Positions 42,557 through 59,629 of a stretch of 64,000 nt of DNA are shown here, piece after piece. The stretch covers positions 142,496-206,495 of IMG/VR virus record IMGVR_UViG_3300009537_002640. One strand, 5' to 3'. The first letter of the stretch is position 1; every line of letters starts with the position of its first letter. The notes under the pieces are model-generated. The model was not told the origin of the DNA and made no database searches. It saw only the letters and a list, made by a program, of their open reading frames with translations. A program made the translations under genes and the position numbers.

Positions 42557-43087
42557 TTACCCTTCGTCTGTCGGTGCCTCGTCGAAAGGGGGGCCAGCCT
42601 CCTCTGCAAGTAGAGCTTCTAGTTCAGCATCTATGTTGTCTGCAGAATCATTCATGGCACTCAGTGTATCAGACATCTGGGTCACAACTCTTTTCGCTGC
42701 ATCAGTTAGAGAGTTAGCTACATCAGTTGCACCAACTTCTTCTGCAGCTTCAGCCATTTTTACTAGACGAACAACAGTATGAGCATATCTACCCACCAAG
42801 GAGCCGGTTGGGCTTTTATTCAACATTTCTATGAGCTTCTTCTGCTGCTCTACTTGATTTTCTACCAAGCCACCATCACCGCGAGCTTCTGCAACATAGA
42901 CTGGCTCTGGATGAGCCTCCTCTATTATGCTCTTCTCTGGCTGGTCTAGTCTCTTCTTTCGGATAGTTTCTACATCCTCTTGGTAAGGATTAGGCTCTGG
43001 TAATGCGGTCTTCTTAAGACCTAAGACATTAGTTTCAGAAGCAATCTTTAGAAACTCTATCATAACCTCGGAATTTTCCCAATTCAT
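42557..43087 (-). CDS. Internal head protein, 176 aa
   Basis: WENSEVMIEFLKIA N-terminal motif, AHP..VEN motif and helical-hairpin tag, each shared with neighbours. Confidence 0.7.
   Translation of the reverse strand: MNWENSEVMIEFLKIASETNVLGLKKTALPEPNPYQEDVETIRKKRLDQPEKSIIEEAHPEPVYVAEARGDGGLVENQVEQQKKLIEMLNKSPTGSLVGRYAHTVVRLVKMAEAAEEVGATDVANSLTDAAKRVVTQMSDTLSAMNDSADNIDAELEALLAEEAGPPFDEAPTDEG
42584..42603 (-). promoter_or_regulatory. Candidate -1 ribosomal frameshift site (AGGAGG, 7-nt spacer, C CCU UUC)
   Basis: X XXY YYZ heptamer in the 0 frame of the 176-aa ORF; the -1 frame is the open frame of the downstream 506-aa ORF. Confidence 0.5.
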
Positions 43088-43089
43088 AT

Positions 43090-43698
43090 TTAGCTCCTTG
43101 GCCCCATATATCCTTGGGGACCATAATTTTTCGGGTCTAGCGATGGGTCTTTTGGAAGAAACTGAAAAGCACCAGCCATCTCTTCACCCTTCTCTCTGGC
43201 ACCCTCTTCATTTCCACTAGTAAACATATCGTAAATTTCGCCTATCTTGGTAAAGCCAAAAGCAAACAGTAGATACTTAGCTGCACGCCAAAGATTCTTT
43301 AGTAGTGCTCGTGGACTTATAACATATTTCCATATGAACTTAAGCACCACACTTGCGAACGCTTCCTTTACTATCTGGTTTTCCATAGAACTAGCGATTT
43401 TGTTTATTCGTTCATCGTTTAGGTTGGCTGTTGCTGGCATTCCAAAAAGCTGTGTAGTAACACCTTGTTCATCGAGCCATCTACCAAAGTCCTCTAACCC
43501 ATATCCGTAATTAGATAAAACTTTATCAAGGGCAGTTATCATCATTCCGCTCCAACCGAAAACAGATGGGGCGTATGATATCAATCTAAAAAGATTTTGC
43601 CCGGGGCCTTGATCGGTTCTCCACATACCTTGAACCATTTTCTTTATGCCTTCTGCAACAAATGCTCGTTTTGAAATATATCGCATAGCTTTGTCCAT
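43090..43698 (-). CDS. Putative ejection/internal protein with hydrophobic helices, about 202 aa
   Basis: Start refined to 43698 (TAATG coupling); ISKRA and IVKEA motifs; hydrophobic segments. Confidence 0.6.
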   Translation of the reverse strand: MDKAMRYISKRAFVAEGIKKMVQGMWRTDQGPGQNLFRLISYAPSVFGWSGMMITALDKVLSNYGYGLEDFGRWLDEQGVTTQLFGMPATANLNDERINKIASSMENQIVKEAFASVVLKFIWKYVISPRALLKNLWRAAKYLLFAFGFTKIGEIYDMFTSGNEEGAREKGEEMAGAFQFLPKDPSLDPKNYGPQGYMGPRS

Positions 43699-45347
43699 TA
43701 TAGAATCGAATTGCGTCCCTGAAAACGGCCATAGTTCCTCTTTACATAATCTTGTAGCATAGGCATGCTCCAATCAGATGGAGGGGGCAGTCCTCTTGGT
43801 CCCTTAAATACCTGTGACACCAGTCGCACTTGATTCTCTCTACTAAAACCCCTATTAGCTAGCCAAGTTTGTGCCGGTGTTCCATCAATAAACTTGTTAT
43901 TGAGTGCAGCTAAAATTTCTGCACCTGTAGGGTTCCACTTATGAGGCTGCTCTTCAACATCATAGGTTCCGCCACCATACTGAACTCCAGTCTGTCGCTC
44001 TTGTGGAGCTGCACCAGGCTGAGTACTTTGTTGCACTGTCTGTGACAGAGTATTAACCTTTTGGCTTATAGCATTCAATACAGCAGGATTTTTACCAACT
44101 ACCCTATAGTCTGTTTGTGGCACATTCATCCACTGACGCAAACGAGGAGACGAATTCATAAATGTCTCCAGCGCCTTTTGAGTATTTGGTCCATAAATGC
44201 CGTCTTCATTGATTCTGCTTGCGCCAGTACTATATGCCTGGTTAAGATAGTTCAAAGACTGTTGCATGCTTGTTACGGCTGGATTCCTTCTGGACAATTG
44301 TCGCTGAGTCCTCTCTTTCTTAGCCGCTCCAGCTGGCCCCCTAAGAGTAACTTGAGTTCCGTCGCCAAGTGTTAGAGCGCGTTTAGACAACCGCTCCTTA
44401 GAGCTTGCTGTAGTAGCAGCAGTGCCTAAGGCTTTTTCAAACAAGCCATGAAGCATAACTAAACTCTGAACGTTGTTCTTAACATCTTCAAGAGTTGCAC
44501 TCTTTGATGCCAACGCTTCTGCCAAGTTGTATCCTGCTTCTTCGCTCTTATTATCGAATTTAGGAGGTCCGCCAAAGCGCTCAGAAAGCTGGTCATACAT
44601 AGATTTTACTTTCTGCCCAAGCTCAGCAAGGTCCTTATTTAAAGTCTGCCCATATTCCTCGACAGCTTTCTGCATAACGGCCTTTTGTTCAGATGCTGCT
44701 TTTTCTTTTAGCTGTAACATAGCAGTTAGTGTCTTATCAATTGCCTGTTCAGCCTGCTCAGCATCACCAGATATCAAACCACCATAACCCCAATCGGTAA
44801 GTTTTGGCTTCAATTGCGTAGGAAACCACTCCTTAAGGCTAACAAGATACTTTGTAAGTTCTGTTAGAGCATTAAGCTTACCTTTGGTTTGTTGAAGTTT
44901 CTCTTCCTCAGACTCAGGAACATCCTGAACGCCCATAGCCGCCTTAAACTCTTTTAGTTTGCCGGTGACTTTTTCTATCTGAGCTTTGGTTTGTTCGTCC
45001 TTAGGATCTAAGTCCTCAAACCTTTCCACTAAATCATCCAAATTATCATCAGCCAGCTTAGTAGCCTGCCAAACAATAGTAGCTCCAAGAATAAGAGCCA
45101 TTGCCGCCCAGCCTGCTGGTCCTGCAGGAGCAAACATTCCAGCTACTGCAGCGGCTTTACCGGTGACACCAAGAGCTAATGCGGCTTTAGCAGCACCAAT
45201 AACTGCTGCCTCCGTAGCTACATTGCTTAATATAGCTTCGCCCCAGTCAGAACTAGCGGCTTCTTTCACTATAGCAGGGGCCATAGCAATACGCGCATAT
45301 TCCTGCATGATTTCGCTATTTTCAAACTGAGACATATAGCTCTCCAT
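43698..45347 (-). CDS. Putative ejection protein with membrane-like segment and peptidoglycan-binding domain, 549 aa
   Basis: FENSEIMQEYARIA motif; about 45-aa Ala/Gly hydrophobic stretch; VTSMQQSLN...DGIYGPNTQKAL PG-binding-1 signature; LSKRA linker. Confidence 0.7.
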   Translation of the reverse strand: MESYMSQFENSEIMQEYARIAMAPAIVKEAASSDWGEAILSNVATEAAVIGAAKAALALGVTGKAAAVAGMFAPAGPAGWAAMALILGATIVWQATKLADDNLDDLVERFEDLDPKDEQTKAQIEKVTGKLKEFKAAMGVQDVPESEEEKLQQTKGKLNALTELTKYLVSLKEWFPTQLKPKLTDWGYGGLISGDAEQAEQAIDKTLTAMLQLKEKAASEQKAVMQKAVEEYGQTLNKDLAELGQKVKSMYDQLSERFGGPPKFDNKSEEAGYNLAEALASKSATLEDVKNNVQSLVMLHGLFEKALGTAATTASSKERLSKRALTLGDGTQVTLRGPAGAAKKERTQRQLSRRNPAVTSMQQSLNYLNQAYSTGASRINEDGIYGPNTQKALETFMNSSPRLRQWMNVPQTDYRVVGKNPAVLNAISQKVNTLSQTVQQSTQPGAAPQERQTGVQYGGGTYDVEEQPHKWNPTGAEILAALNNKFIDGTPAQTWLANRGFSRENQVRLVSQVFKGPRGLPPPSDWSMPMLQDYVKRNYGRFQGRNSIL

Positions 45348-46969
45348 TAGATATTGATGAATTGCTTTATTTGATCAGGGGTTAGGCTTTTAACTGTTCC
45401 TGCAAACTCCTGCTCTAATTTGCCCATTGCAGCTTCTGGGGTAAAGAAACGAATCATAGATTTATAAGATTCTCTAGCCCTAGTACGCAAAGCTTGTTCT
45501 AATTCTGGTGCTCGGCGAAGAGGAAGTCTAGGAAATCTTTTTTGAAACGTCTGAAGCATCAACTGCTCTGCCGCTTGTGGACTCGGACCCTGTGGTTGAG
45601 CCTCCCCCGGCGCCGTCTCTTCTTTCTTTGCTGTTCCAGCACCCTGATTCTGTACTGCATCAAATATAGCTCTAAAGCCAGCCTTACTCTTTACGGCTGC
45701 CCATGCATCTGGATACTTTTGGCGTAACACGTTAGCAAGCTGCCTATCAAAAGGTTGATTTGCTTTCGGCTGTAAGCCCACCATAGTTCTAAGTCGATTT
45801 TGCAGCTGAGTTAGCCTCATCTTTTTCTTATCTTGAGTAGTAGCAGTACCAGATTCATCGAGATTAATTTCTCCTGCTCCAGCAGCCTCCCAACCCTCTG
45901 GGGTTGTAGGAAACCCTGTTTGAGGGTCAACCTTCTGCTGAGTAGTTGCTACTCCAGAATCTTGCTGTTGTCTGCGTTGAGCTAACATTTGTTGTTCTGC
46001 TTGGAGATTAGGAGACCATTGTGCAACCATTGGCTGCACAACACTAGGTAGGTCAGGAGCATTTTTGCCCCATCGAGATTGAAGTTTTTGTAGTGCACTC
46101 ATTGCTTCAGTCAAAGTAGGCATTGAGGTTCCTTGCCACTCACGAATTACCATAGGCTTATTGAATCTCCCACCCAAATCAGCTTGGTTTAGAGCATCCA
46201 ATACCTGCTTCTTAAATTGTTGTGCCGCAGGACTCGCAGCAACCTTTACTTTTTTTTTTAACAGTGAGTCAACACGGTCAGCCGCCTTAACGTACCCAAG
46301 CTTATCCAGTCGGTCAGCTAGATTTAGAAGAGCTGCGTAAGTTCCCTTGGGCATGCTTAACGCAACCTCTACATCCTTCTTTTGCTGCTCGACGATGGTC
46401 TCTACCAAATTCTCATCAGTTTTGCTGTGAGTAAGTTCGGTCCTAGTGCCACCACCCGGATGAGCCTTATCTACTAGCTGTTCGCCAGTCTCGCCAGATA
46501 CATCATAAAGCTTTTCTTCTGCGGTTTTCATATTCTCCATCTCTGCGGATTGTTGTTTGGTTAGGTCCAACTCAGGAAGTTTGGCGTGGGTAAGAGGCGT
46601 AACCCAAGCGTTTGTTACTTCTGTGTGAAACTTTTGAGCTGCAGCCTGTACTTCTGGATTATTAGCGTATGCTTTGGTCCAATGAGCAACTACGGCGTCA
46701 CGAATTCGACCCAAAAATAAGCCAAGCCTCTGATTAGGAATCTTGCCATAGTATTTGGCATGAAACTTATTCATAGCCTGAGTAGCATCCATAAATGGAT
46801 TCTTTGAGCGCATGAGCTGATTAATGGTTTGTCTCATCTCATTAGCAGCTGGACCAGCTTCTTTCAACAGCTCCTCATCTGAAGCTTGTTTGACTAAGCC
46901 CTTGTTAGCAGCAATGTTTGCAAACTCTCTCATCACTTCGCTATCATCAAAATTGTAATTGTGTCGCAT
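45347..46969 (-). CDS. Putative internal/ejection protein, 540 aa
   Basis: FDDSEVMREFANIA motif, AHPGGG-TELTHSKTD motif, helical-hairpin tag, Gln-rich linkers, degenerate PG-binding-like segment. Confidence 0.7.
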   Translation of the reverse strand: MRHNYNFDDSEVMREFANIAANKGLVKQASDEELLKEAGPAANEMRQTINQLMRSKNPFMDATQAMNKFHAKYYGKIPNQRLGLFLGRIRDAVVAHWTKAYANNPEVQAAAQKFHTEVTNAWVTPLTHAKLPELDLTKQQSAEMENMKTAEEKLYDVSGETGEQLVDKAHPGGGTRTELTHSKTDENLVETIVEQQKKDVEVALSMPKGTYAALLNLADRLDKLGYVKAADRVDSLLKKKVKVAASPAAQQFKKQVLDALNQADLGGRFNKPMVIREWQGTSMPTLTEAMSALQKLQSRWGKNAPDLPSVVQPMVAQWSPNLQAEQQMLAQRRQQQDSGVATTQQKVDPQTGFPTTPEGWEAAGAGEINLDESGTATTQDKKKMRLTQLQNRLRTMVGLQPKANQPFDRQLANVLRQKYPDAWAAVKSKAGFRAIFDAVQNQGAGTAKKEETAPGEAQPQGPSPQAAEQLMLQTFQKRFPRLPLRRAPELEQALRTRARESYKSMIRFFTPEAAMGKLEQEFAGTVKSLTPDQIKQFINI

Positions 46970-46982
46970 GATAATACCCCTA

Positions 46983-48014
46983 TTATCGGAAACGAGCTAG
47001 TCGCTTCTCTAGTAATTGTGCCGCCGAATTTATATCCTTGGCCCGACCCTTCTGAATCATTTGTTGTAACACCCTCATTAAGGTCCCTGTATCTTTATAG
47101 GGTCTTGGTACCTTTGGGTTTTGAAATACCTTCTGTCGTATTGCTTGTGCCGCCTGCTGTAATTGAGCAGGATTGGCCTGCTGTGCCGGTCTTTGCTGTT
47201 GAACAGGTTGTCGTGGAGCTTGCTGAGTCTGCTGTTGCTGCTTTCTAGCTTGCCATTGCTGTTGCATTCTTTGCTGAGGTGCAGTATTACGAGGGGGATT
47301 TTTCTCCATTTGGCCCATCTCATCCCATATATCTGCGCCCTTAGCTATAGATTCTTTGATTCCACGAATAACTTTCTCAACCTCATATGCCTCTGAATGC
47401 CTTCCTTCTGCACCTAGACGATATGCAGTGTCCTCTAGACGATTCAGAAGTATCAAACTAAGCCCTTCAGGACCAGAACCTTCTTCTGGAACACTTACAT
47501 CATGTGCCTCATCGCTAGAGCAACGAGGGCAGTCACAATCAGGCCCACATGTACACTTGCCTTCTTCACAACCGCAGTCACATTTTGCCTTAGCATCCTC
47601 AGCGTCTTGTTCCATTAGCTCTTTTAGCTTTTCTTCAGCGTCTTCCACTGTTTCTTCATCGGGCTCTTTCTTTGCAGGAACTTCATAAACCAATCTTTCA
47701 TCTTCGCTCTTCTCTTTGAGCTTTGGCAAACTACTCAAATCATAGAAATCCCCAGCGACTTTTTCAAAATCACCAGGTAAAATGACTGATTTAAGTTGGC
47801 GATGAAAGTATGCCATGTCATTTGAACCAGCTGTTTGTCCAAGGGCAACACGATGACGCATTTCTTTGATGAAATCGCCTAGTAATGTATTAACCTCTTT
47901 GCTAGAGGCCAACTTTTGTGCTACAATACGCTGCCTTTCATCATCAAGTAGATGAGCTACTATATTGATAAAAGTGTCCTTGTCGGATGCATGTATATAG
48001 TCAAAAAGATTCAT
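46983..48014 (-). CDS. Internal head protein with Cys cluster and Gln-rich segment, 343 aa
   Basis: CDCGCEEGKCTCGPDCDCPRC; degenerate hairpin tag; Q-rich linker. Confidence 0.65.
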   Translation of the reverse strand: MNLFDYIHASDKDTFINIVAHLLDDERQRIVAQKLASSKEVNTLLGDFIKEMRHRVALGQTAGSNDMAYFHRQLKSVILPGDFEKVAGDFYDLSSLPKLKEKSEDERLVYEVPAKKEPDEETVEDAEEKLKELMEQDAEDAKAKCDCGCEEGKCTCGPDCDCPRCSSDEAHDVSVPEEGSGPEGLSLILLNRLEDTAYRLGAEGRHSEAYEVEKVIRGIKESIAKGADIWDEMGQMEKNPPRNTAPQQRMQQQWQARKQQQQTQQAPRQPVQQQRPAQQANPAQLQQAAQAIRQKVFQNPKVPRPYKDTGTLMRVLQQMIQKGRAKDINSAAQLLEKRLARFR

Positions 48015-48748: not shown

Positions 48749-49096
48749 TTATTCAGTTTCTGCTTGCAAATCGCGAACGATTACACGCAACGCTTCATCA
48801 ACTGCTGAAGAAGCATCATCTGCACCAGCCTCATCCAACTCTGTAGCAAGCTTGGTAAGTTCCTGAAGAACACCTAGAACGACAGCTTTCTTTTTCTTCT
48901 TGTCATCCTTTTTGTCTTCTTTCTTCTTATCCTTCTTATCTTCCTTGTCGTCCTTCTTTTTCATAAAAGGAGGAAGCTTCTTATCATCCTTGTCGTCGTC
49001 CTTCTCATCATCTTCCTTTGCAGCAGTAACCATTAGCCCCTGCTTGCTCAAGAGATTGTGAAGTTCCAACATCATTTCATCGCCAGATCGTGACAT
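48749..49096 (-). CDS. Small K/D-rich head protein with hairpin tag, about 115 aa
   Basis: Start refined to 49096 (GGAG RBS); K/D/E low-complexity tract, then LTKLATELDEAGADDASSAVDEAL. Confidence 0.65.
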   Translation of the reverse strand: MSRSGDEMMLELHNLLSKQGLMVTAAKEDDEKDDDKDDKKLPPFMKKKDDKEDKKDKKKEDKKDDKKKKKAVVLGVLQELTKLATELDEAGADDASSAVDEALRVIVRDLQAETE

Positions 49097-49097
49097 G

Positions 49098-50486
49098 TTA
49101 TTCTCCTCTGAGTTTATCAATAAATTGACCTTCTGGACCATAATCTTCCATGTTCCACAAGTGCTCGCGGCTCTTAGTGTTTACTAAGTAGCCAGTATCT
49201 AAATCTTCTTCCGATAATTCCTCGACATCGGTTTCTCTATCAACATCTTCTTCGTTCTTAGGTTCCCATTCTTCTTCAACAAATGTCCCTTCTGGGGCCT
49301 CCTCTAAGGTTCCAAACATCGGGTCAACCATATATCGGCGCTCATCTTCCTCTCCCGGACGTCTTTTCAGCTCCTTGAAAACTCCGTGTGGCTCCCAACC
49401 TTTATCGGTGGGGTCTTTTTCTCGTTCTTCTTTAGGTCGTAAGTCTACAAAACGCTCCCAGTCTGCCGCAATCGCATCTAGTTCTGTAGCTAGTTCGTGC
49501 TGGCCTTTGACATCCAGAACTGTTGCCACTTTTGCAAGCCTCATGGCTATTTTCAAATATAATCCTTTGTTCATATTAGCCTCATGAAGAGAACGTCCAC
49601 CAGTAAGTTTTATGTACTCTTTTCCTAAATTATTTCTCCAGCCCTGTACGGCTCCTCTAAATTTACGCATCATTGGGGACTTAGGATCAGCGCCCTTATC
49701 CAACAGTTGCTTATATTTTTCCATCTCTATAGCTATGCGTGTTTTAAGTACCTTTACAACCCTATCTAGAAAAAAGTTTTTGTAACGTTCTGTCTCTTTC
49801 CCATCACCTATCTGAGCCCACATACCAATTCTTCTACCTAGCTTCTGAAATTTACTCTGGGTATTTAAATCTTTAGCAAACAGCTGTCCTTTTTCATCCG
49901 ATTCAGCCACCCTAACGATTGCTTCAAATAAATTTGGCAAATGTCTGGCTAGACTATGTGCCACACCTGACTTTTCCCAAGTATTAGATGCGTCTAGAAG
50001 CACCAGCGGATCATTTTCTATAAGAAACTTTGCACCCTCATGTATATATGGCTCAAATTGTGGGTCTGTTCTTCTACTATACTGATTAAAAAAGTAGATT
50101 ATTCGTTCTGGATTACCCATAACCTCGTTATCAAGCACCCAGCCAGTAATTGGATCGTAAAATGTCTCCTTCATATATCTGCCAGCCAAATATGCCATTG
50201 GATTTCGTCTGGCCACAGTAGCAGCATTTTGAGCATCTTCCAATTCTTCCGAACCACTATAAGTTTTTAGAACATCATCTAGGCTTAATTCATGCATCAT
50301 AGTAGGAGATATGCTTAACGATGATGAGGGAGTTTCTATGTACTTCACTCCAGGTGTCTGAGTAATATCTTCACCACTATACTCTACTGGTTCTTGCGTC
50401 TCAAATGTAGGAAGTGGTGGAATAGGAACTGGCAACTGGTCTTCGTCGTCACCCGACCACTTGAATATCATATTGCCTATTCGCAT
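49098..50486 (-). CDS. Putative internal head protein, 462 aa
   Basis: Helical core, hairpin tag LAKVATVLDVKGQHELATELDAIA, acidic tail. Confidence 0.65.
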   Translation of the reverse strand: MRIGNMIFKWSGDDEDQLPVPIPPLPTFETQEPVEYSGEDITQTPGVKYIETPSSSLSISPTMMHELSLDDVLKTYSGSEELEDAQNAATVARRNPMAYLAGRYMKETFYDPITGWVLDNEVMGNPERIIYFFNQYSRRTDPQFEPYIHEGAKFLIENDPLVLLDASNTWEKSGVAHSLARHLPNLFEAIVRVAESDEKGQLFAKDLNTQSKFQKLGRRIGMWAQIGDGKETERYKNFFLDRVVKVLKTRIAIEMEKYKQLLDKGADPKSPMMRKFRGAVQGWRNNLGKEYIKLTGGRSLHEANMNKGLYLKIAMRLAKVATVLDVKGQHELATELDAIAADWERFVDLRPKEEREKDPTDKGWEPHGVFKELKRRPGEEDERRYMVDPMFGTLEEAPEGTFVEEEWEPKNEEDVDRETDVEELSEEDLDTGYLVNTKSREHLWNMEDYGPEGQFIDKLRGE

Positions 50487-50760: not shown

Positions 50761-53700
50761 TTAGCGCCAATTAAGCTGTGCCAACTGCTCATTTAGGCTT
50801 GGGGCATTAACTGGTTCTGGACTTGCGGTAACAGTCATTGATTGACCGGCACCATCAGCTCCTACACGGGGTAGGGAACCGCCCTTCCTAGAATTGTAGT
50901 TAGCTACTACACGCTTATTTGACTCAAAAGCTGCGTCATCAAAGTTCATCAGCTGGTCAACGTATCCCTCAAGGGATGCCTGAGTAGAAGCGATTAGCCC
51001 CTTCTCCTGAGCCTGGAGACCTACTGCATACGCTCTGCGTAGCTTGGTCTTGTACTCTCCGTTGTCAGCTTCCTTCTTCTTAGAAGCAAACTCTTTGCTC
51101 AAGTCTGCACCGAAGCTACCAGTGTCAGGACCTTGTGCCCAGAACTTCTTCCAGTAAGAAGCTGCTGCTGAGTCAACCTTACCCTCAGCCACCAACCTAT
51201 CAACATCTTCAGCCTTGAGTGCGCCCTTAACAATTGCCTCTTGAATGAGAGCAGCTGCCTCACGCACATTTCTTGGGCCAGATTCAGCGACATCTCGCAT
51301 TACATCGTGAATCTCAGAAATGGTTTCAACATGAGCACCGTCTGTCTTGGTATGAGTTAGCTCAGTTGTAGTACCCTTTCCGCCTGGATGAGCCTCAAAG
51401 TACTCTTTCTGAGTTGCATTCTCTGCCTTGCCCAAATCCAACTCATACTTTCCAAGGATGTCACCTGCTTGAGCAAGAAGAGCATCACGCTCAGCCTTGC
51501 GAGCAGCCATTACAGAATCTAGAGCTTCGTCAACTGCGAAGTCACCATCATCTGCCATCATTGCCCCACCACATGACTCATCATGTGCATGGTCCTCGGC
51601 ACACATTGGTGCATCTGCATCATCCTCGTCTTTCTTCTTCTTTTTCTCATCCTTCTCATATTCATCTTCTTCATCCTCGTCGGACTCTTTATCCTTTGCG
51701 AGGTCAGGATGCGTAAGCTCGCCCTCTGGACCTTTTTCTTGCTTCTCTTCCTGCAGAAGCTTCATTAGAGAAGCCTCATCAGCATCAGTTAGAGCATAGT
51801 CCATCTCGTCGCCCATACCCATCATGTCCATATCACCCATAGCCTTAGCTAGAAGTGCAGCACGATTTTGAGCACGGACCCTTAGAGCTTGTTCTAGAAG
51901 TTCAGCAGCCTTCTTCTCGGCGTCAGACTTTTCGGACTTCTTATCTTCCTTCTCGTCCTCATCATCTTCATCCTCGTCTTTCTTCTTTTTCTTAGCTGCT
52001 TCTTTCTTCTTCTTATCCTCTTTGTCATCCTCATCTTTGTCTTTCTTGTCTGCCTTTTCGTCTTCCTTATCATCGTCTTTCTTCTTGGCAGCTTCTTTTT
52101 TCTTATCTTTCTTCTTCTTATCCTCTTTATCATCCTCATCTTCATCGTCGTCTTTCTTCTTCTTAGCCAAGACAACTTCAGCTTGAGCAAGTAGAGTCTC
52201 GCTGTCGGCTAGAGCTTGAACAGCTGCACTAAGAACACGGCCCTTAGTTTCACCATCAAGGTCTTCTGCCTTATCAAGAGCTTCGCTCACAAGAGCTAGC
52301 TCATCAGCAGACTCATCTAGGAGGGAGTGAACCTCCATAGCCTCATCGCGGAACGCTAGAGTTTGTTCCATTGGACTTTCGGAACCACCTTCGCCTTCCT
52401 CGTCGACCTTAACTTCAATGTCGACTAGTTTCTCACCACCCTCATCAACAGCCTTGCGGATGTCGTCTAGAGCAGTTTCAATCTTAGTGAGGCCAGCTTC
52501 TACCTTGCCCTTGAGATCAGGCTCATCTTCCTTCTTCTCTGGTGCAGGTGCTTCACCCTCAGGAGCTGCAGGAGCAGCTTCTGGTGCAGGTGCGTCTCCG
52601 CCTGGAGCTGGTGCTCCACCTGCTAGAGGGTCAGCTCCACCGGGAGCCAAAGGATCTTGAGCACCCTTTAGGAGATATGAAACCTCATCAAAGCCTTCGG
52701 TGCGGATATGGCGAATAATATCCTTTCCGTAGTCCTTGGAGCTTAGATAATCCCAGTTCTCATCAAGCTGGTCATCAAAGATTTCCTTGCCGGTTGCAGT
52801 TAGAATCAACTTGTCACCAGCATACACATCCCAACGGGATGCATCCTTGACTAGATTGCCTTGGTCATCAGCGACCTTGGTAAACTTTGCACGAAGGCGG
52901 GCACGCAACCACATCTTCTTTACTTTCTCGTCGCCAGGAACCATACCATCGGTACCGCCCATGTCGTAGATGCCTTGTAGGTGCTTATCTTCGTTATCGC
53001 GGATTTTGTCCGCTTCCTCTTTTGGATACTTTTCCTTGCCAGGGGTTGGCTCATTGATACCACCACCGCCTAGCCAGTAAGCGCGACGTCGTAGTCTACG
53101 CTCCTGTAGTTGAGCTTCAGTTAGCTTTCCATCTTCAGCTGCATCCTTGTCAGTCTTCTGAACCTGCTCTAGCAGTGCTTGACGGCGTAGTTTACGCTCC
53201 TCAATCTCTGCTTTCTTCTTGTCGGCTTTACCGCCGCCAAGATTGCGGGTTTCCCACGTTCTTCCTTCATCGCCTGGGTGAAGACCTTCGGATCCAGTTT
53301 CTAATGGCTCGCCAACCATTTGCTTATCTTCAGTGTCACGGATTTTATCCGCTTCTTCCTTCTCATACTTAGGCTTACCTGGAGTAGGCTCATTAATGCC
53401 GCCTCCACCTAGCCAATATGCTCGACGTGCTTTGGCACGGGCACGTAATCTCGCAGAATTCATATTGTCGTCCTCCTTAGAGACTGTTTTTAACTCATTG
53501 AATGATTTACTTAGTTTTTCTATCTTGGATCGAAGGAGACGTATTTCATTAAAAAGAACACCCAGGTTTCCGTCTCCCTCTAGACTAGCCAATCTCTGAC
53601 TAGGCTCGACTGATATTGGTGTAGTGGTAGTGCGATACGTACCTTCACCGTTGCCAGCCATTGGACTTACACTTGGCTCTGACCCACCACCAGTAGCTGG

Positions 53701-54789
53701 TAAAGCAGGAGGAGCCTCGTCTGTTTCAGTATTGCCGATGCCGAATTTGGCAGCTAATACCTCTTCGATTTTTTCTTTTAGAGCAGGGTTGGTTACAGCC
53801 TTCAATGCCGCGACCAATTCACCCATATCCATATTTTCTAGACCATGTATGGGTGAGCTTTTAGCCTCTACTCTTTTAGTCTTTTGTTCGAGTTTCATTA
53901 GCGTGTTAAGCTTAGTTTGCATTTCGTTGATGTTGTCAGCAAGCGCTTGTAGTTCAGTTGGGTTTACACAGGCACCAACTAGCAACTCGTCAATACGCTC
54001 TTGTTTTTGTTCAGCGTAATTCTGCAAGCTTGCGACTATTTGTCGGATTTTTGCCAGACCATCAGCGCCATTAACTACGAGGCTTAGCTCGATTGGGCTT
54101 AGGTCTAGGTTCACTTCGCCATAATTTGTGCGTCCACGAACATGATGACAATAGTCTCGTTCGGTTCTCGCTACATGGCCACATTCGGTGCATACGGAGC
54201 GACCGACTGCCGTACCCATTGATACGCAATTAGCATATCCGGTTTCTACTTTGCGTGCTAGGTCAGGGTAATTCTTCCTATCTAACGCAAATAAAGCATG
54301 AACCCTCTTAAACTTAGGGTCATAGTAAGTATCGATTATTATTCCACGAATGCCGTCTACGCTATCACTCTTGTGGTCTTTGCATAGTGGCTTTCCTACC
54401 CAGTTCTTGTAGGCTTTTAGCAGCTCATCTTCAGGAAAAATGTCACCATTAGCATTCTTGTAGGGCTTTAGTCCATCAGGAGATTCCCATTTCACAGAGT
54501 GCTCGTTGCCCTTTACCTTAATAGGCACGAAAGACCCCTTAGCTGGCTTACCATTAGAAGCTAGAACGGGCTCACCTGTATCCTGGTCTATCAAACATGC
54601 TTCAGCAGCATGCATCATAATAGCGTGGCCATAAAGAAAGTCACTAGCTCTTGGAGCAATCCTCTTTAGCTTCTTGGCTAACTTAACAAACCTTTTGGCG
54701 ATTTGTTCGTCCGCTAGAGCTTCTTTCGGTGTCATCAGATTTGTGTCTGGTGAAAAGCTTAGATTCTCTCCGATTTTCCTAATAGCCAT
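50761..54789 (-). CDS. Prohead (maturation) protease fused to a large scaffold region, 1342 aa
   Basis: N-terminal HK97/herpes-type protease signatures: NGDIFPEDEL, KPLCKDH (H139), VSMG (S190), CTECG..YCHH zinc site, IELSLV..GAD; then about 1000 aa of acidic, K/D/E-rich and coiled-coil sequence. Confidence 0.85.
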   Translation of the reverse strand: MAIRKIGENLSFSPDTNLMTPKEALADEQIAKRFVKLAKKLKRIAPRASDFLYGHAIMMHAAEACLIDQDTGEPVLASNGKPAKGSFVPIKVKGNEHSVKWESPDGLKPYKNANGDIFPEDELLKAYKNWVGKPLCKDHKSDSVDGIRGIIIDTYYDPKFKRVHALFALDRKNYPDLARKVETGYANCVSMGTAVGRSVCTECGHVARTERDYCHHVRGRTNYGEVNLDLSPIELSLVVNGADGLAKIRQIVASLQNYAEQKQERIDELLVGACVNPTELQALADNINEMQTKLNTLMKLEQKTKRVEAKSSPIHGLENMDMGELVAALKAVTNPALKEKIEEVLAAKFGIGNTETDEAPPALPATGGGSEPSVSPMAGNGEGTYRTTTTPISVEPSQRLASLEGDGNLGVLFNEIRLLRSKIEKLSKSFNELKTVSKEDDNMNSARLRARAKARRAYWLGGGGINEPTPGKPKYEKEEADKIRDTEDKQMVGEPLETGSEGLHPGDEGRTWETRNLGGGKADKKKAEIEERKLRRQALLEQVQKTDKDAAEDGKLTEAQLQERRLRRRAYWLGGGGINEPTPGKEKYPKEEADKIRDNEDKHLQGIYDMGGTDGMVPGDEKVKKMWLRARLRAKFTKVADDQGNLVKDASRWDVYAGDKLILTATGKEIFDDQLDENWDYLSSKDYGKDIIRHIRTEGFDEVSYLLKGAQDPLAPGGADPLAGGAPAPGGDAPAPEAAPAAPEGEAPAPEKKEDEPDLKGKVEAGLTKIETALDDIRKAVDEGGEKLVDIEVKVDEEGEGGSESPMEQTLAFRDEAMEVHSLLDESADELALVSEALDKAEDLDGETKGRVLSAAVQALADSETLLAQAEVVLAKKKKDDDEDEDDKEDKKKKDKKKEAAKKKDDDKEDEKADKKDKDEDDKEDKKKKEAAKKKKKDEDEDDEDEKEDKKSEKSDAEKKAAELLEQALRVRAQNRAALLAKAMGDMDMMGMGDEMDYALTDADEASLMKLLQEEKQEKGPEGELTHPDLAKDKESDEDEEDEYEKDEKKKKKDEDDADAPMCAEDHAHDESCGGAMMADDGDFAVDEALDSVMAARKAERDALLAQAGDILGKYELDLGKAENATQKEYFEAHPGGKGTTTELTHTKTDGAHVETISEIHDVMRDVAESGPRNVREAAALIQEAIVKGALKAEDVDRLVAEGKVDSAAASYWKKFWAQGPDTGSFGADLSKEFASKKKEADNGEYKTKLRRAYAVGLQAQEKGLIASTQASLEGYVDQLMNFDDAAFESNKRVVANYNSRKGGSLPRVGADGAGQSMTVTASPEPVNAPSLNEQLAQLNWR

Positions 54790-54792: not shown

Positions 54793-55530
54793 TTACTCCT
54801 CGTCTTCTTTTTCTTCGTTTAACCAGAAATTTTCCATTTCTTCTTGAGAAATCTCTTCTGTCTCGTGACCAAAGTCTTCATCGTCATCAGGGCCCCATTG
54901 CGACTTATTAAGAGCATCTTCTTCTTCATCTGGGTCTGGTAAATACTGCTCTTCCTCTCCAGGTTCCACTTCTTCTACGCCACCTGGACCTGCCCTAAAA
55001 GCACCAAGCATTTCCTCTTCGTCCAAATCTTGCTTTAGATTAACGTTGGGAGAATCAATGGCCTGGTCTGAACTAAAAAAGTCTAGAGCTGCTTGGCTTT
55101 CGTCGTCATTAGCTTCGTCCTTACCCAAATCTTTACGTAGCTTTTCGAAATCAGACTTAGAGGGACGCTTGCCGAAAGTCATTGTGTAAAAGTCTTTCTT
55201 AGCAGAGTCTAAGCATTCCTGAGTCCTTTCCATATCCTTAATTACTTTATCGAGTCCTAGTTCCTTTATAGCATCAGCAATATCGAAATAACGCATACGA
55301 CGAGATAATTCGCCCAGCCCCTTACAACCATTATGCATAGCGTCTTCTGCATCCACCAGAAACACTATCAGGCTCTTCTTAACATCATCATTCAAGCCTT
55401 TTAGAGGGGCCTTTGGACGTGCAGCCTTAGACCGCAACACACCATCGACAGCGCCAGCCAAGTCGAATTTTTTCTCTTGGTCCAGTTTGTCAGCAAGCCT
55501 AATCAAAGCATTAATATGCTTAGCGTCCAT
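54793..55530 (-). CDS. Putative internal head protein, about 245 aa
   Basis: Start refined to 55530 (AGGAGG RBS); N-terminal hairpin tag; acidic tail. Confidence 0.65.
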   Translation of the reverse strand: MDAKHINALIRLADKLDQEKKFDLAGAVDGVLRSKAARPKAPLKGLNDDVKKSLIVFLVDAEDAMHNGCKGLGELSRRMRYFDIADAIKELGLDKVIKDMERTQECLDSAKKDFYTMTFGKRPSKSDFEKLRKDLGKDEANDDESQAALDFFSSDQAIDSPNVNLKQDLDEEEMLGAFRAGPGGVEEVEPGEEEQYLPDPDEEEDALNKSQWGPDDDEDFGHETEEISQEEMENFWLNEEKEDEE

Positions 55531-55702
55531 GTTCACTCTCCTCCTGATTTTCTGTGCCACACTTGCATAAGACATCGTTATTTTCACCATCCAAAGCCAC
55601 TACGGTAAGGGGTTTTCCACACTTGTCACACTTCTTTAGTTCCAAGTCGTCATCATAAAATCCCTTAATTGGCTCAGGGTCACCTGTTTTTACGAATGCC
55701 AT
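55520..55702 (-). CDS. Small zinc-ribbon protein, 60 aa
   Basis: CDKCG...CKCG; start refined to 55702. Confidence 0.6.
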   Translation of the reverse strand: MAFVKTGDPEPIKGFYDDDLELKKCDKCGKPLTVVALDGENNDVLCKCGTENQEESEHGR

Positions 55703-55703
55703 G

Positions 55704-56387: not shown

Positions 56388-56400
56388 ATTTCAAGGGCAT

Positions 56401-57177
56401 TTATCGAGTCGAATCCCCGTAAGGACTCTCTAAATTACCATACCCGCTGTAAAAATAGGCATCGCTAAAGCCTTGAAACATACCAGCATTCTGATTATCA
56501 GTCACTCCTGTGCCAACTCTACCGTTAGAGCGAACCAAATCATCTAGCCCGTCTAGTGCCTCATCTGAGTTGTAGTACTCTGCCATCTCTTCTAACTCTT
56601 CGTCAGTCAATTCTGGCTCAGGAGGCATATTTTCAAGTGCCTCTAGCTCTTCTTCAGTATACTCTTTAACAGCATTATCCAACTCAGTGGCTTCTTCAAA
56701 TCGACCTTTTTCATCTAAGTCAGATGCTATTTGTAGAAGCCTAGCAGCTAATCGTGCAGATTCTGGTACATTAAACATACTATAACCTCCGCCTGTGCCA
56801 TCTCCACCTATATAACCCTGATTTTCAACGTTAGATTGCTCTTCCGGAATATAATCGGATGTCAAATCCTCTAAAGATGAGTCAATTGCTGCCATTGTAT
56901 CATAAAGAACCTTTGCCTTATCTATGAATCCGGCTTCTTCCAGATACTTAGCAAGGTCTGAAAGCTTAGACAAAGTGTGGGTTTCGGCATCCATACTATC
57001 ATTAGCATCGTCGTCTTTGTGTTTAAAGTACTCTACCTGCTGCTCTCTCTTTTCAGCCTGGCCACGGGAACTATAAGGGCCGCCAAGCTGTTTACGCTTG
57101 CCGTCCTTACCCTTCTTTCGAGAGAATAGCACGTATCCTTTGTCGGTTTTCCTAATGATTGCTGTTTTTATTAGCAT
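56401..57177 (-). CDS. Putative internal head protein with two hairpin tags, 258 aa
   Basis: LIKTA N-terminus, small basic domain (GYVLFS..KQLGGPY.SRGQAEKREQQVEYFKH), two copies of the tag. Confidence 0.65.
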   Translation of the reverse strand: MLIKTAIIRKTDKGYVLFSRKKGKDGKRKQLGGPYSSRGQAEKREQQVEYFKHKDDDANDSMDAETHTLSKLSDLAKYLEEAGFIDKAKVLYDTMAAIDSSLEDLTSDYIPEEQSNVENQGYIGGDGTGGGYSMFNVPESARLAARLLQIASDLDEKGRFEEATELDNAVKEYTEEELEALENMPPEPELTDEELEEMAEYYNSDEALDGLDDLVRSNGRVGTGVTDNQNAGMFQGFSDAYFYSGYGNLESPYGDSTR

Positions 57178-57184
57178 ATCGCAC

Positions 57185-58260: not shown

Positions 58261-58886
58261 TCGTCTGAGGAACGCTCTTTGGTTTTTGCCATTGTATCTA
58301 ACATGTCATCAAACTGACTAGCTAGTTTGGTGTCTCCTTGCTCATCTAAAAAGCTTGCAATTGAAACCAGGTCCTCTGGTTGCATCCTTAAGCCTACTCG
58401 CTGAGCCAGGTCAGCCACTACTTCATCAATAGCCCTGGCCTCGTCATAAAGACCATCCTTATCTAGCTTGTAAGCAACTTTGAATAATTTAGCTAACATG
58501 GAATCCCTCCTTAAACTAGATTCTTTTTCTAACTCCTTCTGAAGCTCAATTTCCTTCTTCAGCAAGAATGATAGACGTTTTGCCTCTTCTTCTGTTATAT
58601 CATCTCTTTCCTTTAGGCGATGTATGTTCTCTGCAACCTCATCGAGTTGCTTTCGTGTTCGTTCTTTGGATGCCTTCTTTTCTGGAACTCGGTCCCGTTT
58701 AGATATTTGCTTTCTTTTCTTTTCAGTGAGATTATGAAACCATATATCTCCTATAGTGGCAGCTATCTGTTCCTCAGAGTACTCAGGAGAGTTTTTCTTT
58801 ATCTCCTTTTTCATCTTATCAAACCACTTCTTAGGTGGGCGTTGTTTCTTTTGAGATTTTTCTTTTGCAATTACCCGTTGAGTCAT
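58257..58886 (-). CDS. Basic helical protein with two hairpin tags, about 209 aa
   Basis: Start refined to 58886 (AAGGAG RBS); LFKVAYKLDKDGLYDEARAIDEVV and LVSIASFLDEQGDTKLASQFDDML. Confidence 0.65.
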   Translation of the reverse strand: MTQRVIAKEKSQKKQRPPKKWFDKMKKEIKKNSPEYSEEQIAATIGDIWFHNLTEKKRKQISKRDRVPEKKASKERTRKQLDEVAENIHRLKERDDITEEEAKRLSFLLKKEIELQKELEKESSLRRDSMLAKLFKVAYKLDKDGLYDEARAIDEVVADLAQRVGLRMQPEDLVSIASFLDEQGDTKLASQFDDMLDTMAKTKERSSDE

Positions 58887-58897
58887 TTGAAAGCTCC

Positions 58898-59218
58898 TTA
58901 TACAATATCTCGTGTCTTTCCGTTTCGTGGACGGCCATAGTGAACAGTAGAGGTGGTGCTGTCGCTTAGGCGGAAGCCAGAACCTACTTCCCAAAACATT
59001 TTGACAAAATCTTCGCTTATGTAAAACTCATTACCTTTATCGTTCCTAAGCTTTAGAATACCACAGTCTTCATCGTAATCTATAGGGGTAGCGATAACGA
59101 TTGTGTAGGACTGTGCATCACCATCAGCATAAGATAGCCACTCAGAATCCAGGTCGATAAAAAGCTCTAACTTCTTGTTAAGAAAGTTAGTAGCTATGAA
59201 TTTGCCATTTTTTGCCAT
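58898..59218 (-). CDS. Small beta-rich hypothetical protein (possible Sm-like barrel), 106 aa
   Basis: GAGG RBS; beta-strand pattern only, fold call tentative. Confidence 0.55.
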   Translation of the reverse strand: MAKNGKFIATNFLNKKLELFIDLDSEWLSYADGDAQSYTIVIATPIDYDEDCGILKLRNDKGNEFYISEDFVKMFWEVGSGFRLSDSTTSTVHYGRPRNGKTRDIV

Positions 59219-59230
59219 TTTAATCCTCTA

Positions 59231-59629
59231 TTAAGTATTGTATCGGGCTTTTCCACGAGTACCAACATATTTTAGTCGTATATGTCTATTGGACGCATCA
59301 ACTTCCCAAATTGCCGCATAAGCTGATCTTCCGCCTGTTAAATGACAATGAAAGAGTCCAGAAGATAATAGTTTACTAAAGTTAGGCCATTTATACAGGT
59401 ATGGACTTTTTTTCAGATCCGTAATAAGATTATGTGCAGTTTCTTGAATCCGCTTGGGCAATTTCGAAATCCCCTTTAATACTGACTTCGGAATATCCAC
59501 AGTCCATTCTTTTGCAGTTTCTGGGTCGGAAGAGTATGAAATTAATATCTCATCTATTTGATCAGCAATATCATAATATCCTAGTTTGTCTAGTCTATTA
59601 GCCACATTGCACAGTGTTTTCAAAAACAT
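59231..59629 (-). CDS. RelE/ParE-superfamily toxin-like domain with N-terminal hairpin tag, 132 aa
   Basis: WTVDIPKSVLKGISKLPKRIQ...FSKL...FHCHLTGG..YAAIWEV...IRLKYVGTRGKARY matches a RelE-like pattern; GGAGG RBS. Confidence 0.7.
   Translation of the reverse strand: MFLKTLCNVANRLDKLGYYDIADQIDEILISYSSDPETAKEWTVDIPKSVLKGISKLPKRIQETAHNLITDLKKSPYLYKWPNFSKLLSSGLFHCHLTGGRSAYAAIWEVDASNRHIRLKYVGTRGKARYNT

What the first reader, a model, noticed from the sequence alone, without database searches (positions are those of the whole stretch)
42700..59620. A 24-aa helical-hairpin tag shared by nine unrelated head-module proteins (candidate capsid-loading signal)
Seen: consensus L-x-x-[LIV]-A-x-x-L-D-x-x-G-x4-A-x-x-[VIL]-D-x-x-[LIV], 11 copies in 9 ORFs. 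Examples: LLNLADRLDKLGYVKAADRVDSLL (~46260), LTKLATELDEAGADDASSAVDEAL (~48795), LAKVATVLDVKGQHELATELDAIA (~49475), LIRLADKLDQEKKFDLAGAVDGVL (~55435), LLQIASDLDEKGRFEEATELDNAV (~56666), LFKVAYKLDKDGLYDEARAIDEVV (~58410), LVSIASFLDEQGDTKLASQFDDML (~58296), LCNVANRLDKLGYYDIADQIDEIL (~59550); weaker copies at ~42700, ~47363 and ~56880. I saw none in tail genes. The carrier proteins are otherwise dissimilar. Established: T4 internal proteins use a short capsid-targeting sequence. Inference: a modular docking tag that recruits cargo to the scaffold/core or capsid interior. It could be a tool for loading proteins into virions.
Basis: partly seen in the sequence, partly recalled or inferred. Interest (0 to 1): 0.88.

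Follow-up and report, generated by a model that had tools for sequence, protein, structure and literature searches.

The report
Helical-hairpin tag on phage head proteins
A 24-residue two-helix motif is attached to about ten otherwise unrelated proteins encoded beside the capsid genes of a large uncultured phage, and to thousands of proteins in related phages. It most likely docks them into the assembling head, which would make it a natural label for proteins that these phages carry inside the virion.

Summary
Eight strong copies and three degenerate copies of the 24-aa motif lie in nine minus-strand ORFs between 42.6 and 59.6 kb, and none lie elsewhere in the 64 kb. I found a twelfth, degenerate copy in the C-terminal part of the 1342-aa protein whose N-terminus matches the phage G head maturation protease.

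The window is the last 64 kb of a 206-kb IMG/VR contig. Its major capsid protein (MCP) is 53.5% identical to that of Bacillus phage G.

The motif is a real, mobile, virus-specific module:
- It matches no Pfam or PHROGs family.
- A profile finds 4,204 cluster representatives among 1.84 billion proteins.
- Its carriers are mostly unrelated once the motif is masked.
- It usually sits at residue 5 of the protein, or at the C-terminus.
- In relatives it lies upstream of the MCP gene 40 times and downstream twice.
- An untagged homologue of the tagged RelE-like protein exists.
- AlphaFold2 predicts a helical hairpin.

The capsid-loading reading is the best-supported explanation (about 0.5) but it is unproven. 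No cultured relative or virion proteome carries the motif, some copies in relatives lie far from head genes, and the binding partner is unknown. In kind it is a new variant of the capsid-targeting tags known from T4, HK97, P22 and encapsulins.

The parts
59543..59614 (-). Hairpin copy 1 (strong). Residues 6-29 of the 132-aa ORF 59231-59629, an N-terminal tag in front of a RelE-like domain.
   Evidence: 39-43 bits. RelE-like domain: phrog_32175 E=4.9e-7 and phrog_1213 E=0.0034. The untagged 95-aa homologue P0013 aligns to residues 42-130.
58416..58487 (-). Hairpin copy 2 (strong). First of two copies in ORF 58257-58994. The called product, P0001, is 209 aa.
   Evidence: AF2 predicts four helices for the two-copy module: pLDDT 71.5, pTM 0.57.
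58299..58370 (-). Hairpin copy 3 (strong). Second copy in the same ORF, near its C-terminus.
56668..56739 (-). Hairpin copy 4 (strong). Residues 147-170 of the 258-aa ORF 56401-57177, which has an acidic tail.
56893..56964 (-). Hairpin copy 5 (degenerate; both Asp positions replaced). Residues 72-95 of the same 258-aa ORF.
   Evidence: relaxed pattern, 8 hits against 0.0245 expected; sequence read
55435..55506 (-). Hairpin copy 6 (strong; Lys at the Gly position). Residues 29-52 of the 265-aa ORF 54793-55590, which has a very acidic C-terminal tail.
50761..54789 (-). 1342-aa protein. The N-terminal domain (about residues 15-255) is homologous to the phage G gp19 head maturation protease. A long, charged, low-complexity region follows.
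   Evidence: BLASTP to G gp19: 35% identity, E=6.5e-34. phrog_18299 'head maturation protease' E=1.3e-15. gp19 is annotated as a protease and was detected in G particles (PMC12484599). Composition.
51181..51393 (-). Module A (the AHPGG..TELTH.KTD..VETI segment) plus a degenerate hairpin, near the C-terminus of the protease polyprotein (about residues 1133-1203).
   Evidence: 42% identity over 105 aa to residues 168-269 of the 540-aa carrier, E=3e-10. Conserved in protease orthologues of at least 10 related loci.
49467..49538 (-). Hairpin copy 7 (strong). Residues 317-340 of the 462-aa ORF 49098-50486.
48788..48859 (-). Hairpin copy 8 (strong). Residues 95-118 of the 130-aa ORF 48749-49141, which has a Lys/Asp/Glu-rich low-complexity N-terminal half.
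   Evidence: Orthologues in L126 and L127 keep the motif.
47367..47438 (-). Hairpin copy 9 (degenerate). About residues 193-216 of the 343-aa ORF 46983-48014.
   Evidence: relaxed pattern; sequence read
46259..46330 (-). Hairpin copy 10 (strong). Residues 214-237 of the 540-aa ORF 45347-46969, preceded by module A (residues 165-213).
   Evidence: Orthologues in 16 related loci keep the motif.
42698..42769 (-). Hairpin copy 11 (degenerate).
   Evidence: BLASTP to the 540-aa ORF, E=4e-5. Orthologues score 12-19 bits. In the AF2 model the hairpin helices are 97-117 and 121-163, and blocks covering residues 101-140 have mean pLDDT 92-97. In most relatives this ORF is the N-terminal part of an about 460-aa protein just upstream of the 251-aa and MCP genes.
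38935..40038 (-). Major capsid protein. It anchors the head module.
   Evidence: phrog_2522 E=1.2e-78. 53.5% identity to phage G gp27. 185 relatives in IMG/VR; the 80 kept are 65-93% identical.
59598..63470 (-). 1290-aa polyvalent-type protein (type IB topoisomerase, VanY-like and 2H/LigT phosphoesterase domains), immediately upstream of the first tagged gene.
   Evidence: Pfam: Topoisom_I E=7.5e-31, 2_5_RNA_ligase2 E=3.5e-10, VanY E=0.0021. The class is described in PMC5512222.

Best explanation
The motif is a roughly 24-32-residue helical hairpin that works as a docking tag for the prohead interior. Its consensus in relatives is M-[IL]-K-E, then L-[IV]-K-L-A-N-x-L-D-x-K-G-L-x-K-E-A-D-x-[IL]-D-x-[IV]-[IL], then K-K-[AL]-A.

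Proposed mechanism. The ancestral context is a larger 'A+B' module, made of an AHP...VE[NT] segment followed by the hairpin. That module is present in the prohead-protease polyprotein and in two paralogous head proteins (the 176-aa and 540-aa ORFs). Hairpin B on its own has been copied onto many unrelated proteins. During prohead assembly the hairpin binds a common partner. The partner could be another hairpin or the A+B proteins of the scaffolding core (two hairpins would make a four-helix unit), or the inner face of the very conserved MCP. Tagged proteins are thereby co-assembled inside the shell. Low-complexity acidic carriers probably act as core or scaffold material. Enzyme or toxin carriers (RelE-like, Dps/ferritin, superoxide dismutase, wall hydrolases, 2H phosphoesterase) are probably kept and delivered with the DNA.

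Shown: the motif, its modularity, its predicted fold, its genomic placement, and its homologue in the protease protein.

Inferred: binding, encapsidation and delivery.
For: 1. Placement in the window. All 12 copies lie in the 17 kb between a polyvalent-protein gene and the MCP gene, on both sides of the prohead protease gene, and none lie in the tail or other genes.
2. Placement in relatives. In 79 MCP-centred related loci there are 40 copies upstream of the MCP gene and 2 downstream, with 444 kb and 465 kb searched. In 17 contigs where both the MCP and the motif positions are known, 26 of 37 copies lie within 25 kb upstream and none within 25 kb downstream.
3. Link to the protease. The protease polyprotein carries a homologous module A plus a degenerate hairpin (E=3e-10), conserved in its orthologues. 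The G homologue of the protease is a virion-detected head maturation protease.
4. Add-on nature. An untagged RelE homologue exists. The double hairpin is shuffled with ferritin and other modules. After masking, 177 carriers fall into 118 clusters.
5. Terminal position and arrays. 85 of 150 copies start within 30 residues of the N-terminus, with a modal leader of exactly 4 residues, and 33 of 150 lie within 30 residues of the C-terminus. Tandem arrays of differently tailed genes occur (L085, L104, L046). This resembles the T4 internal-protein locus, whose members share only a capsid targeting sequence (PMC3012670).
6. Virus specificity. 114 of 119 loci retrieved by the pattern from IMG/VR carry a true motif, against 1 of 120 from genomes.
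7. Carrier types. Recognised carrier domains are accessory or effector types. No Pfam family of a polymerase, helicase, terminase or tail protein appeared among the hits. Two carriers weakly match the T7 scaffolding family PF05396.
8. Cellular location. Carriers have no signal peptide or transmembrane segment.
Against: - There is no experimental or proteomic evidence. The nearest cultured phage, G, lacks the motif in its head region, and tblastn against GenBank phages finds nothing.
- In large related contigs, 11 of 27 copies lie more than 25 kb from the MCP gene.
- One multi-carrier locus sits among small unknown ORFs with no head gene within 10 kb.
- Only 21 of 110 pattern-derived loci contain a window-type head marker.
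- The neighbours of carriers include PhoH, PIN, RNase HII, ligase and similar genes.
- The rest of this contig, 142 kb, could not be scanned.
- No partner was identified and no cleavage site is evident after the tag.
- The copy in the protease protein is degenerate and is not picked up by either HMM.
Confidence: 0.5

Rival explanations
1. The hairpin is a generic self-association module, half of a four-helix bundle or a TPR-like stack. Diverse phage proteins use it to dimerise or to form mixed oligomers, with no specific link to the capsid. The cluster near the MCP gene would then reflect local duplication in a hypervariable region.
For: - Two adjacent copies are predicted as a compact set of four helices.
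- Many proteins carry 2-3 copies, or copies at both ends, and some consist of two hairpins only.
- The best Foldseek matches are TPR-like repeats, though none is significant.
- Copies also occur far from head genes.
Against: - It does not explain the 40:2 bias to the upstream side of the MCP gene, or the absence of copies from tail genes.
- It does not explain the homologous module in the prohead protease protein.
- It does not explain the strict preference for the extreme N-terminus.
- Two surface Asp residues are almost invariant, 111/111 and 106/111. That suggests a specific, conserved partner.
- This reading is compatible with the docking model if the partner is another hairpin inside the prohead.
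Confidence: 0.25
2. The hairpin docks carriers onto a different hub, such as a host machine (chaperone, protease, RNA polymerase or an export system) or a phage-made intracellular structure. It would then be a localisation or hijacking signal unrelated to virion loading.
For: - Carriers include DnaJ, PilZ, AP2, zinc-ribbon and RING-like domains.
- Neighbours in other phages are often non-structural genes.
- One carrier gave a weak hit to a T7SS signal family, E=8.4e-4.
Against: - The motif tracks one viral MCP clade rather than a host group: 17 pattern-derived contigs are among the 80 best MCP relatives.
- It is almost absent from cellular genomes.
- It is concentrated in the head block and is present in the head protease protein.
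Confidence: 0.12
3. The hairpin is a recognition element or degron for a protease. The protease could be the prohead protease, or the trypsin-like enzyme encoded among the carriers. The tag would mark proteins for timed processing rather than for loading.
For: - A trypsin-like gene sits among the carriers.
- Trypsin_2 recurs among the neighbours of carriers elsewhere, in 4 of 110.
- The T4 capsid targeting sequence is itself removed by the prohead protease (my own knowledge).
Against: - The window's trypsin-like protein has a lipoprotein signal peptide, so it is probably exported.
- No conserved cleavage-like motif follows the tag beyond K-K-[AL]-A.
- Internal and C-terminal copies are common.
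Confidence: 0.08

Closest known systems
T4 capsid targeting sequence (CTS) of the internal proteins IPI-III, Alt and others
   Same: Both are short, conserved sequences shared by otherwise diverse proteins, which are encoded partly in tandem in a variable locus. The T4 CTS directs them into the scaffolding core of the prohead, and foreign proteins can be loaded with it (PMC3012670). Here the modal form is likewise at the extreme N-terminus, and carriers come in arrays.
   Different: The T4 CTS is about 10 residues, strictly N-terminal, and removed by the gp21 protease (my own knowledge). The motif here is a 24-32-residue predicted helical hairpin. It is also used internally and C-terminally, often in 2-3 copies, and shows no evidence of cleavage. 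Sequence similarity to the T4 CTS was not tested.
Docking domain shared by maturation protease and scaffold (lambda C/Nu3, herpesvirus protease/scaffold, P2 gpO; the HK97 protease C-terminal targeting signal)
   Same: The head protease protein and other head proteins share one module. In those systems the shared domain is what loads both proteins into procapsids (my own knowledge). Duda et al. 2013, on the HK97 protease and mechanisms of encapsidation, is listed in the references of PMC12749128.
   Different: In those systems sharing arises from nested or overlapping genes, or from one short C-terminal peptide. Here the module is on separate genes, and its hairpin half has spread to many unrelated carriers. 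Binding to the MCP was not shown.
P22-type scaffolding protein C-terminal helix-turn-helix coat-binding domain
   Same: It is a small two-helix hairpin that tethers an internal protein to the capsid inner surface, and it has been used to load foreign cargo (my own knowledge). Scaffold ends contacting the MCP N-arm are summarised in PMC12749128.
   Different: The P22 domain is basic and sits only at the scaffold C-terminus. This hairpin has two invariant Asp residues and is acidic. It occurs in many proteins and positions. No sequence or fold match was obtained.
Encapsulin cargo-loading peptides
   Same: Both involve an HK97-fold shell loaded with tagged enzymes, including ferritin-like proteins. 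Ferritin/Dps-domain carriers of the hairpin exist.
   Different: Encapsulin tags are short extended C-terminal peptides on cellular cargo (my own knowledge). The element here is a tailed phage, with a sheath, tail genes and a head protease, and the tag is helical.
MuF-domain fusions and polyvalent proteins of phages (Iyer et al. 2017)
   Same: Variable effector domains are attached to a head-associated module and encoded next to head genes, and they are proposed to be packaged and injected (PMC5512222). A polyvalent-type 1290-aa protein lies directly upstream of the tagged genes.
   Different: MuF is a full-size domain. Here the module is a 24-aa hairpin. The polyvalent protein in the window carries no hairpin.

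Membership tests
T4-type capsid targeting sequence | Located at the extreme N-terminus of the carrier | tested here: inconclusive
   In relatives, 85 of 150 copies start within 30 residues of the N-terminus, with a modal 4-residue leader. In the window only 2 of 12 copies are N-terminal.
T4-type capsid targeting sequence | Shared by otherwise unrelated proteins of a variable locus | tested here: met
   118 clusters among 177 masked carriers. Tandem arrays occur in L085, L104 and L046. Window carriers are mutually dissimilar.
T4-type capsid targeting sequence | Removed by the prohead protease at a consensus site; about 10 residues long | not testable with these tools
   Cleavage cannot be tested in silico. 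No conserved site follows the tag. The length, 24-32 aa, differs from T4.
T4-type capsid targeting sequence | Sufficient to direct a protein into the prohead core | not testable with these tools
   This needs an encapsidation experiment.
Protease/scaffold shared docking domain | The same module is present in the maturation protease protein and in other internal head proteins | tested here: met
   The C-terminal part of the 1342-aa protein matches the 540-aa carrier at E=3e-10 over 105 aa, and this is conserved in orthologues. The 176-aa protein matches the 540-aa protein at E=4e-5. The hairpin part in the protease protein is degenerate.
Protease/scaffold shared docking domain | The module binds the MCP or the scaffold in the procapsid | not testable with these tools
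   No multimer prediction or binding assay was available.
P22-type scaffold helix-turn-helix | Helical hairpin fold | tested here: met
   AF2 on the two-copy module predicts helices 16-29/33-50 and 56-69/72-92, with 10-residue block pLDDT of 68-84 over residues 11-90. For the 176-aa protein, the hairpin region (residues 101-140) has block pLDDT 92-97.
P22-type scaffold helix-turn-helix | Basic coat-binding face at the C-terminus of the scaffolding protein | tested here: not met
   The conserved polar residues are Asp, Asn and Glu, and the position in carriers varies.
Encapsulin cargo-loading peptide | Short extended C-terminal peptide on cargo of a tail-less encapsulin shell | tested here: not met
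   The motif is helical and mostly N-terminal. The element encodes a sheath, tail genes and a head protease.
TPR repeat | 34-residue helix-turn-helix repeat with a significant fold or sequence match | tested here: not met
   The unit is 24 aa. The best Foldseek PDB hits are TPR-like but have E>=0.1. There is no Pfam TPR hit on carriers.
Any catalogued protein family (Pfam-A, PHROGs v4) | A model that matches the motif | tested here: not met
   No family is shared by more than 2 of 75 or 124 carriers, and none lies on the motif.
Polyvalent proteins (for the neighbouring 1290-aa protein only) | Several unrelated enzymatic domains in one polypeptide, encoded beside virion genes | tested here: met
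   Topoisom_I, VanY-like and 2H phosphoesterase domains, about 20 kb upstream of the MCP gene in one transcriptional direction.

The most novel reading that the evidence does not exclude
The hairpin is a transferable, sequence-readable address label for the inside of the capsid. It is used by a very large clade of uncultured aquatic phages with a G-like capsid protein. Under this reading, the roughly 4,200 tagged protein clusters are a catalogue of virion-carried proteins, covering both scaffold-core material and injected effectors such as RelE-like toxins, Dps/ferritin, superoxide dismutase, wall hydrolases and 2H phosphoesterases. Loading would work by hairpin-to-hairpin pairing with an A+B adaptor that the prohead protease also carries.
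Probability: 0.35. Interest if true: 0.9.

Novelty: new variant of a known kind. Interest (0 to 1): 0.72.

Why it matters
Which proteins a phage packs into its head and delivers with its DNA is usually known only from mass spectrometry of cultured phages. If this hairpin is the loading signal, three things follow:
- The carried proteome of thousands of uncultured large phages could be read from sequence alone. That would point to new anti-defence and host-takeover effectors.
- It would show how very large capsids organise a multi-protein core.
- It would offer a compact natural tag for placing proteins inside capsid shells in laboratory systems.

Even if the function is different, this is a large family, with 4,204 clusters at 50% identity. 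It is virus-specific and has no entry in Pfam or PHROGs.

Tried and rejected
- Pfam and PHROGs on all carriers and neighbours in the window gave no family for the motif.
- tblastn of a consensus tag and of the two-copy module against 50,697 GenBank phages gave nothing relevant.
- The head region of phage G, scanned with both HMMs, has no copy.
- PDB sequence searches found nothing significant for the 231-aa and 251-aa conserved proteins, the protease domain, or the 176-aa/460-aa family.
- Foldseek of the two-copy model against PDB found nothing below E=0.1. Foldseek of the 176-aa model against viral models found only an uncharacterised protein.
- My first DNA pattern had one N too many and found nothing; it was corrected.
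- I abandoned walking the remaining 142 kb of the contig with the look-up of encoding contigs, because each step adds less than 10 kb.
- Names for the 460-aa family from public sources were all 'hypothetical protein'.
- An EF-hand or dockerin reading of the loop was rejected, because the Gly spacing does not fit and the Pfam hits were marginal and not on the motif.
- Chance and low-complexity explanations were rejected by the shuffles and by the contrast between viral contigs and genomes.

Full report
**Where the window comes from.** All long ORFs are on the minus strand. The 540-aa ORF maps at 100% identity to IMGVR_UViG_3300009537_002640, a 206,495-bp contig, and the window is its last 64 kb. 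ORF 38935-40038 is the major capsid protein (MCP): phrog_2522 at E=1.2e-78, and 53.5% identity to gp27 of Bacillus phage G, the only close cultured relative. ORF 33600-37187 matches a tail sheath family, so this is a large myovirus-type phage.

In transcription order the region of the finding runs as follows:
- a 1290-aa polyvalent-type protein (topoisomerase IB, VanY-like and 2H phosphoesterase domains);
- a run of small and medium ORFs;
- a 1342-aa protein;
- more ORFs, including an endolysin-like one (43698-45347);
- a 251-aa conserved protein;
- the MCP.

The first 255 residues of the 1342-aa protein are 35% identical to phage G gp19 and match a PHROG annotated as head maturation protease. 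In phage G, gp19 is annotated as a head maturation protease and was detected in particles (PMC12484599).

**The observation.** Their E-values are 1e-9 to 1e-12, against 2.6 for the next best hit in the whole six-frame translation. A strict back-translated DNA pattern matches five times, against 0.00 in shuffles.

The three weak copies fail the HMM because the two Asp positions are replaced, but they are not noise. A pattern that keeps only the hydrophobic, Ala and Gly positions hits eight places in 20,830 residues, against 0.0245 expected. The copy near 42.7 kb aligns with the motif of the 540-aa protein and is recognisable in orthologues.

So 11 copies in 9 ORFs is correct, and none lies outside 42.6-59.6 kb. 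With the motif masked, the carriers are mutually dissimilar, except that the 176-aa and 540-aa proteins share a larger module.

**The motif is a widespread, mobile, virus-specific module.**
- Homologues of the two-copy carrier combine the double motif, in different orders, with a Dps/ferritin domain, a second conserved module and a coiled coil.
An HMM scan of those 119 loci gave 204 domains in 191 ORFs of 114 loci.
- The same pattern in 185,579 prokaryotic genomes also reached 120 rows, but only one hit is a true motif, on an 8-kb MAG contig. The rest score below 12 bits.
- A 36-column profile finds 4,204 cluster representatives at E<=0.001, and 367 at E<=1e-10, among 1.84 billion proteins.
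- With the motif masked, 177 carriers fall into 118 BLAST clusters.
- No Pfam or PHROGs family covers the motif. The recognised carrier domains are scattered: Sod_Fe_C, ferritin, LysM, Hydrolase_2, DnaJ, PilZ, a 2H-type phosphodiesterase, zinc ribbons and AP2. Two carriers give weak hits to the T7 scaffolding family.
- The tagged RelE-like protein of the window has a 95-aa untagged homologue that aligns to residues 42-130, so the tag is an addition.

**Anatomy.** In relatives the commonest form starts at residue 5, after M-[IL]-K-E, and is followed by K-K-[AL]-A. Conservation stops there. L1, A5, L8, D9, G12, A17 and D21 are nearly invariant. The two halves are a pseudo-repeat (A-[ND]-x-L-D occurs twice).

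AlphaFold2 predicts the two-copy module as four helices (pLDDT 71.5, pTM 0.57). It predicts the hairpin of the 176-aa protein with pLDDT 92-97. I did not inspect the coordinates, so packing of the helices is inferred from the secondary structure and the pTM value. Foldseek gives only non-significant TPR-like matches.

Many proteins carry two or three copies, or one at each end. The carriers in the window have no signal peptide or membrane segment, and several have very acidic or Lys/Asp/Glu-rich low-complexity regions.

**Link to head assembly.**
- The MCP has at least 185 relatives in IMG/VR. The 80 retrieved are 65-93% identical, and 17 of their contigs are also among the contigs found through the motif.
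- In the 79 MCP-centred loci, 40 motif copies lie upstream of the MCP gene and 2 downstream, with nearly equal sequence on each side. These loci are related to each other, so the copies are not independent events, but the asymmetry is large.
- In contigs where both positions are known, 26 of 37 copies are within 25 kb upstream, none within 25 kb downstream, and all are on the MCP strand. In contigs above 100 kb the split is 16 near and 11 far.

The most telling result is new. Residues of about 1133-1234 of the protease polyprotein align with residues 168-269 of the 540-aa carrier (42% identity, E=3e-10). The alignment covers a conserved AHP...VET segment (module A) and the position of the hairpin, which is degenerate there. 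Protease orthologues conserve this module, and one related protein has module A followed by a canonical hairpin.

The 176-aa protein has the same A+B arrangement. In most relatives it is the N-terminal and most conserved part of an about 460-aa protein encoded immediately upstream of the 251-aa and MCP genes. A maturation protease must be built into the prohead, and in lambda, P2, HK97 and herpesviruses it gets there through a docking element that it shares with scaffold proteins (my own knowledge; the Duda et al. 2013 title is cited).

**Interpretation.** The best reading is that the hairpin is a docking tag for the prohead core. Its nearest functional precedent is the T4 capsid targeting sequence, which is the only feature shared by a diverse set of internal proteins (PMC3012670). 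I put this at about 0.5.

What is shown is modularity, fold, placement and homology to a module of the protease protein. What is inferred is binding, encapsidation and delivery.

Against it:
- There is no proteome or cultured carrier. Phage G lacks the motif.
- A sizeable minority of copies lies far from the MCP gene.
- One locus has several carriers among small unknown ORFs.
- Only 21 of 110 motif-derived loci contain a window-type head marker.
- Neighbours of carriers elsewhere include PhoH, PIN, RNase HII and ligase genes.
- The other 142 kb of this contig could not be scanned.

The rivals are a generic self-association hairpin (0.25), docking to another hub (0.12) and a protease recognition element (0.08). 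The first of these overlaps with the docking model if hairpins pair with each other inside the prohead.

**Novelty and score.** Capsid-loading tags are known, so the kind of system is not new. This tag differs in four ways: it is a helical hairpin, it is used at either end or internally and in multiple copies, it is shared with a protease-associated module, and it is spread over thousands of protein clusters of an uncultured phage clade with no database entry. I rate it a new variant of a known kind, with interest 0.72.

Noticed in passing
window 57550-58260 (-): The trypsin-like serine protease (Trypsin_2, E=4.8e-15) encoded among the tagged genes begins with a typical lipoprotein signal and lipobox (MKRIFVLLVLMLTGC). 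It is therefore probably exported rather than packaged. Trypsin_2 genes recur next to carriers in other phages, in 4 of 110 neighbours.
   Followed up: partly
window 59598-63470 (-): This 1290-aa protein combines a type IB topoisomerase core, a VanY-like peptidase region and a 2H/LigT phosphoesterase. That is a polyvalent-protein architecture. Its last 32 nt overlap the start of the tagged RelE-like gene.
   Followed up: partly
window 58257-58994 (-), N-terminal half; P0002-P0011: A second mobile module (RPPKKWWDKMKKEIKK...SPDYSEE...IGDIWF..L.EKKRK) travels with the double hairpin and with Dps/ferritin domains, in varying order, in homologues. Its function is unknown.
   Followed up: no
window 48024-48719 (-) and 40165-40920 (-): Two conserved beta-rich proteins, found in 37 and 74 of 79 related loci, share a homologous C-terminal segment (hhalign probability 89.8%, E=1.7e-6). 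The 251-aa one occupies the position of the phage G decoration protein gp26. Neither has a PDB sequence match.
   Followed up: partly
window 38935-40038 (-) and loci L123-L201: The MCP is unusually conserved, at 65-93% identity across contigs from many different samples, while the 20 kb upstream of it is hypervariable in gene content.
   Followed up: partly
window 50761-54789 (-): After the protease domain, the 1342-aa protein has a duplicated segment (RRAYWLGGGGINEPTPGK.KY.KEEADKIRD) and about 250 residues of Lys/Asp/Glu low complexity. This fits a protease-scaffold fusion.
   Followed up: partly
window 40995-42515 (-), 43698-45347 (-); alignment A7: The 506-aa protein, and the about 460-aa relatives of the 176-aa protein, carry a hydrophobic middle segment and a C-terminal peptidoglycan-binding-like motif. 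The neighbouring 549-aa protein has PG_binding_1 and endolysin-like hits. So wall-binding domains sit inside the head block.
   Followed up: partly
window 46983-48014 (-): The 343-aa carrier has a Cys-rich CxC cluster (about residues 145-165) and a long Gln-rich C-terminal region.
   Followed up: no
window 5801-17236 (-): A 3811-aa ORF has a PTL_trimer Pfam hit on record. Further giant ORFs (2180 aa and at least 1040 aa) follow just outside the window on the contig. They are probably tail fibre or host-recognition proteins.
   Followed up: no
L278:1825-2382 (+): The only true motif among 120 pattern hits in prokaryotic genomes lies on an 8.4-kb contig of a MAG labelled Rickettsiaceae. It is probably a phage fragment binned with the MAG, and at best a weak hint about the host.
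   Followed up: no
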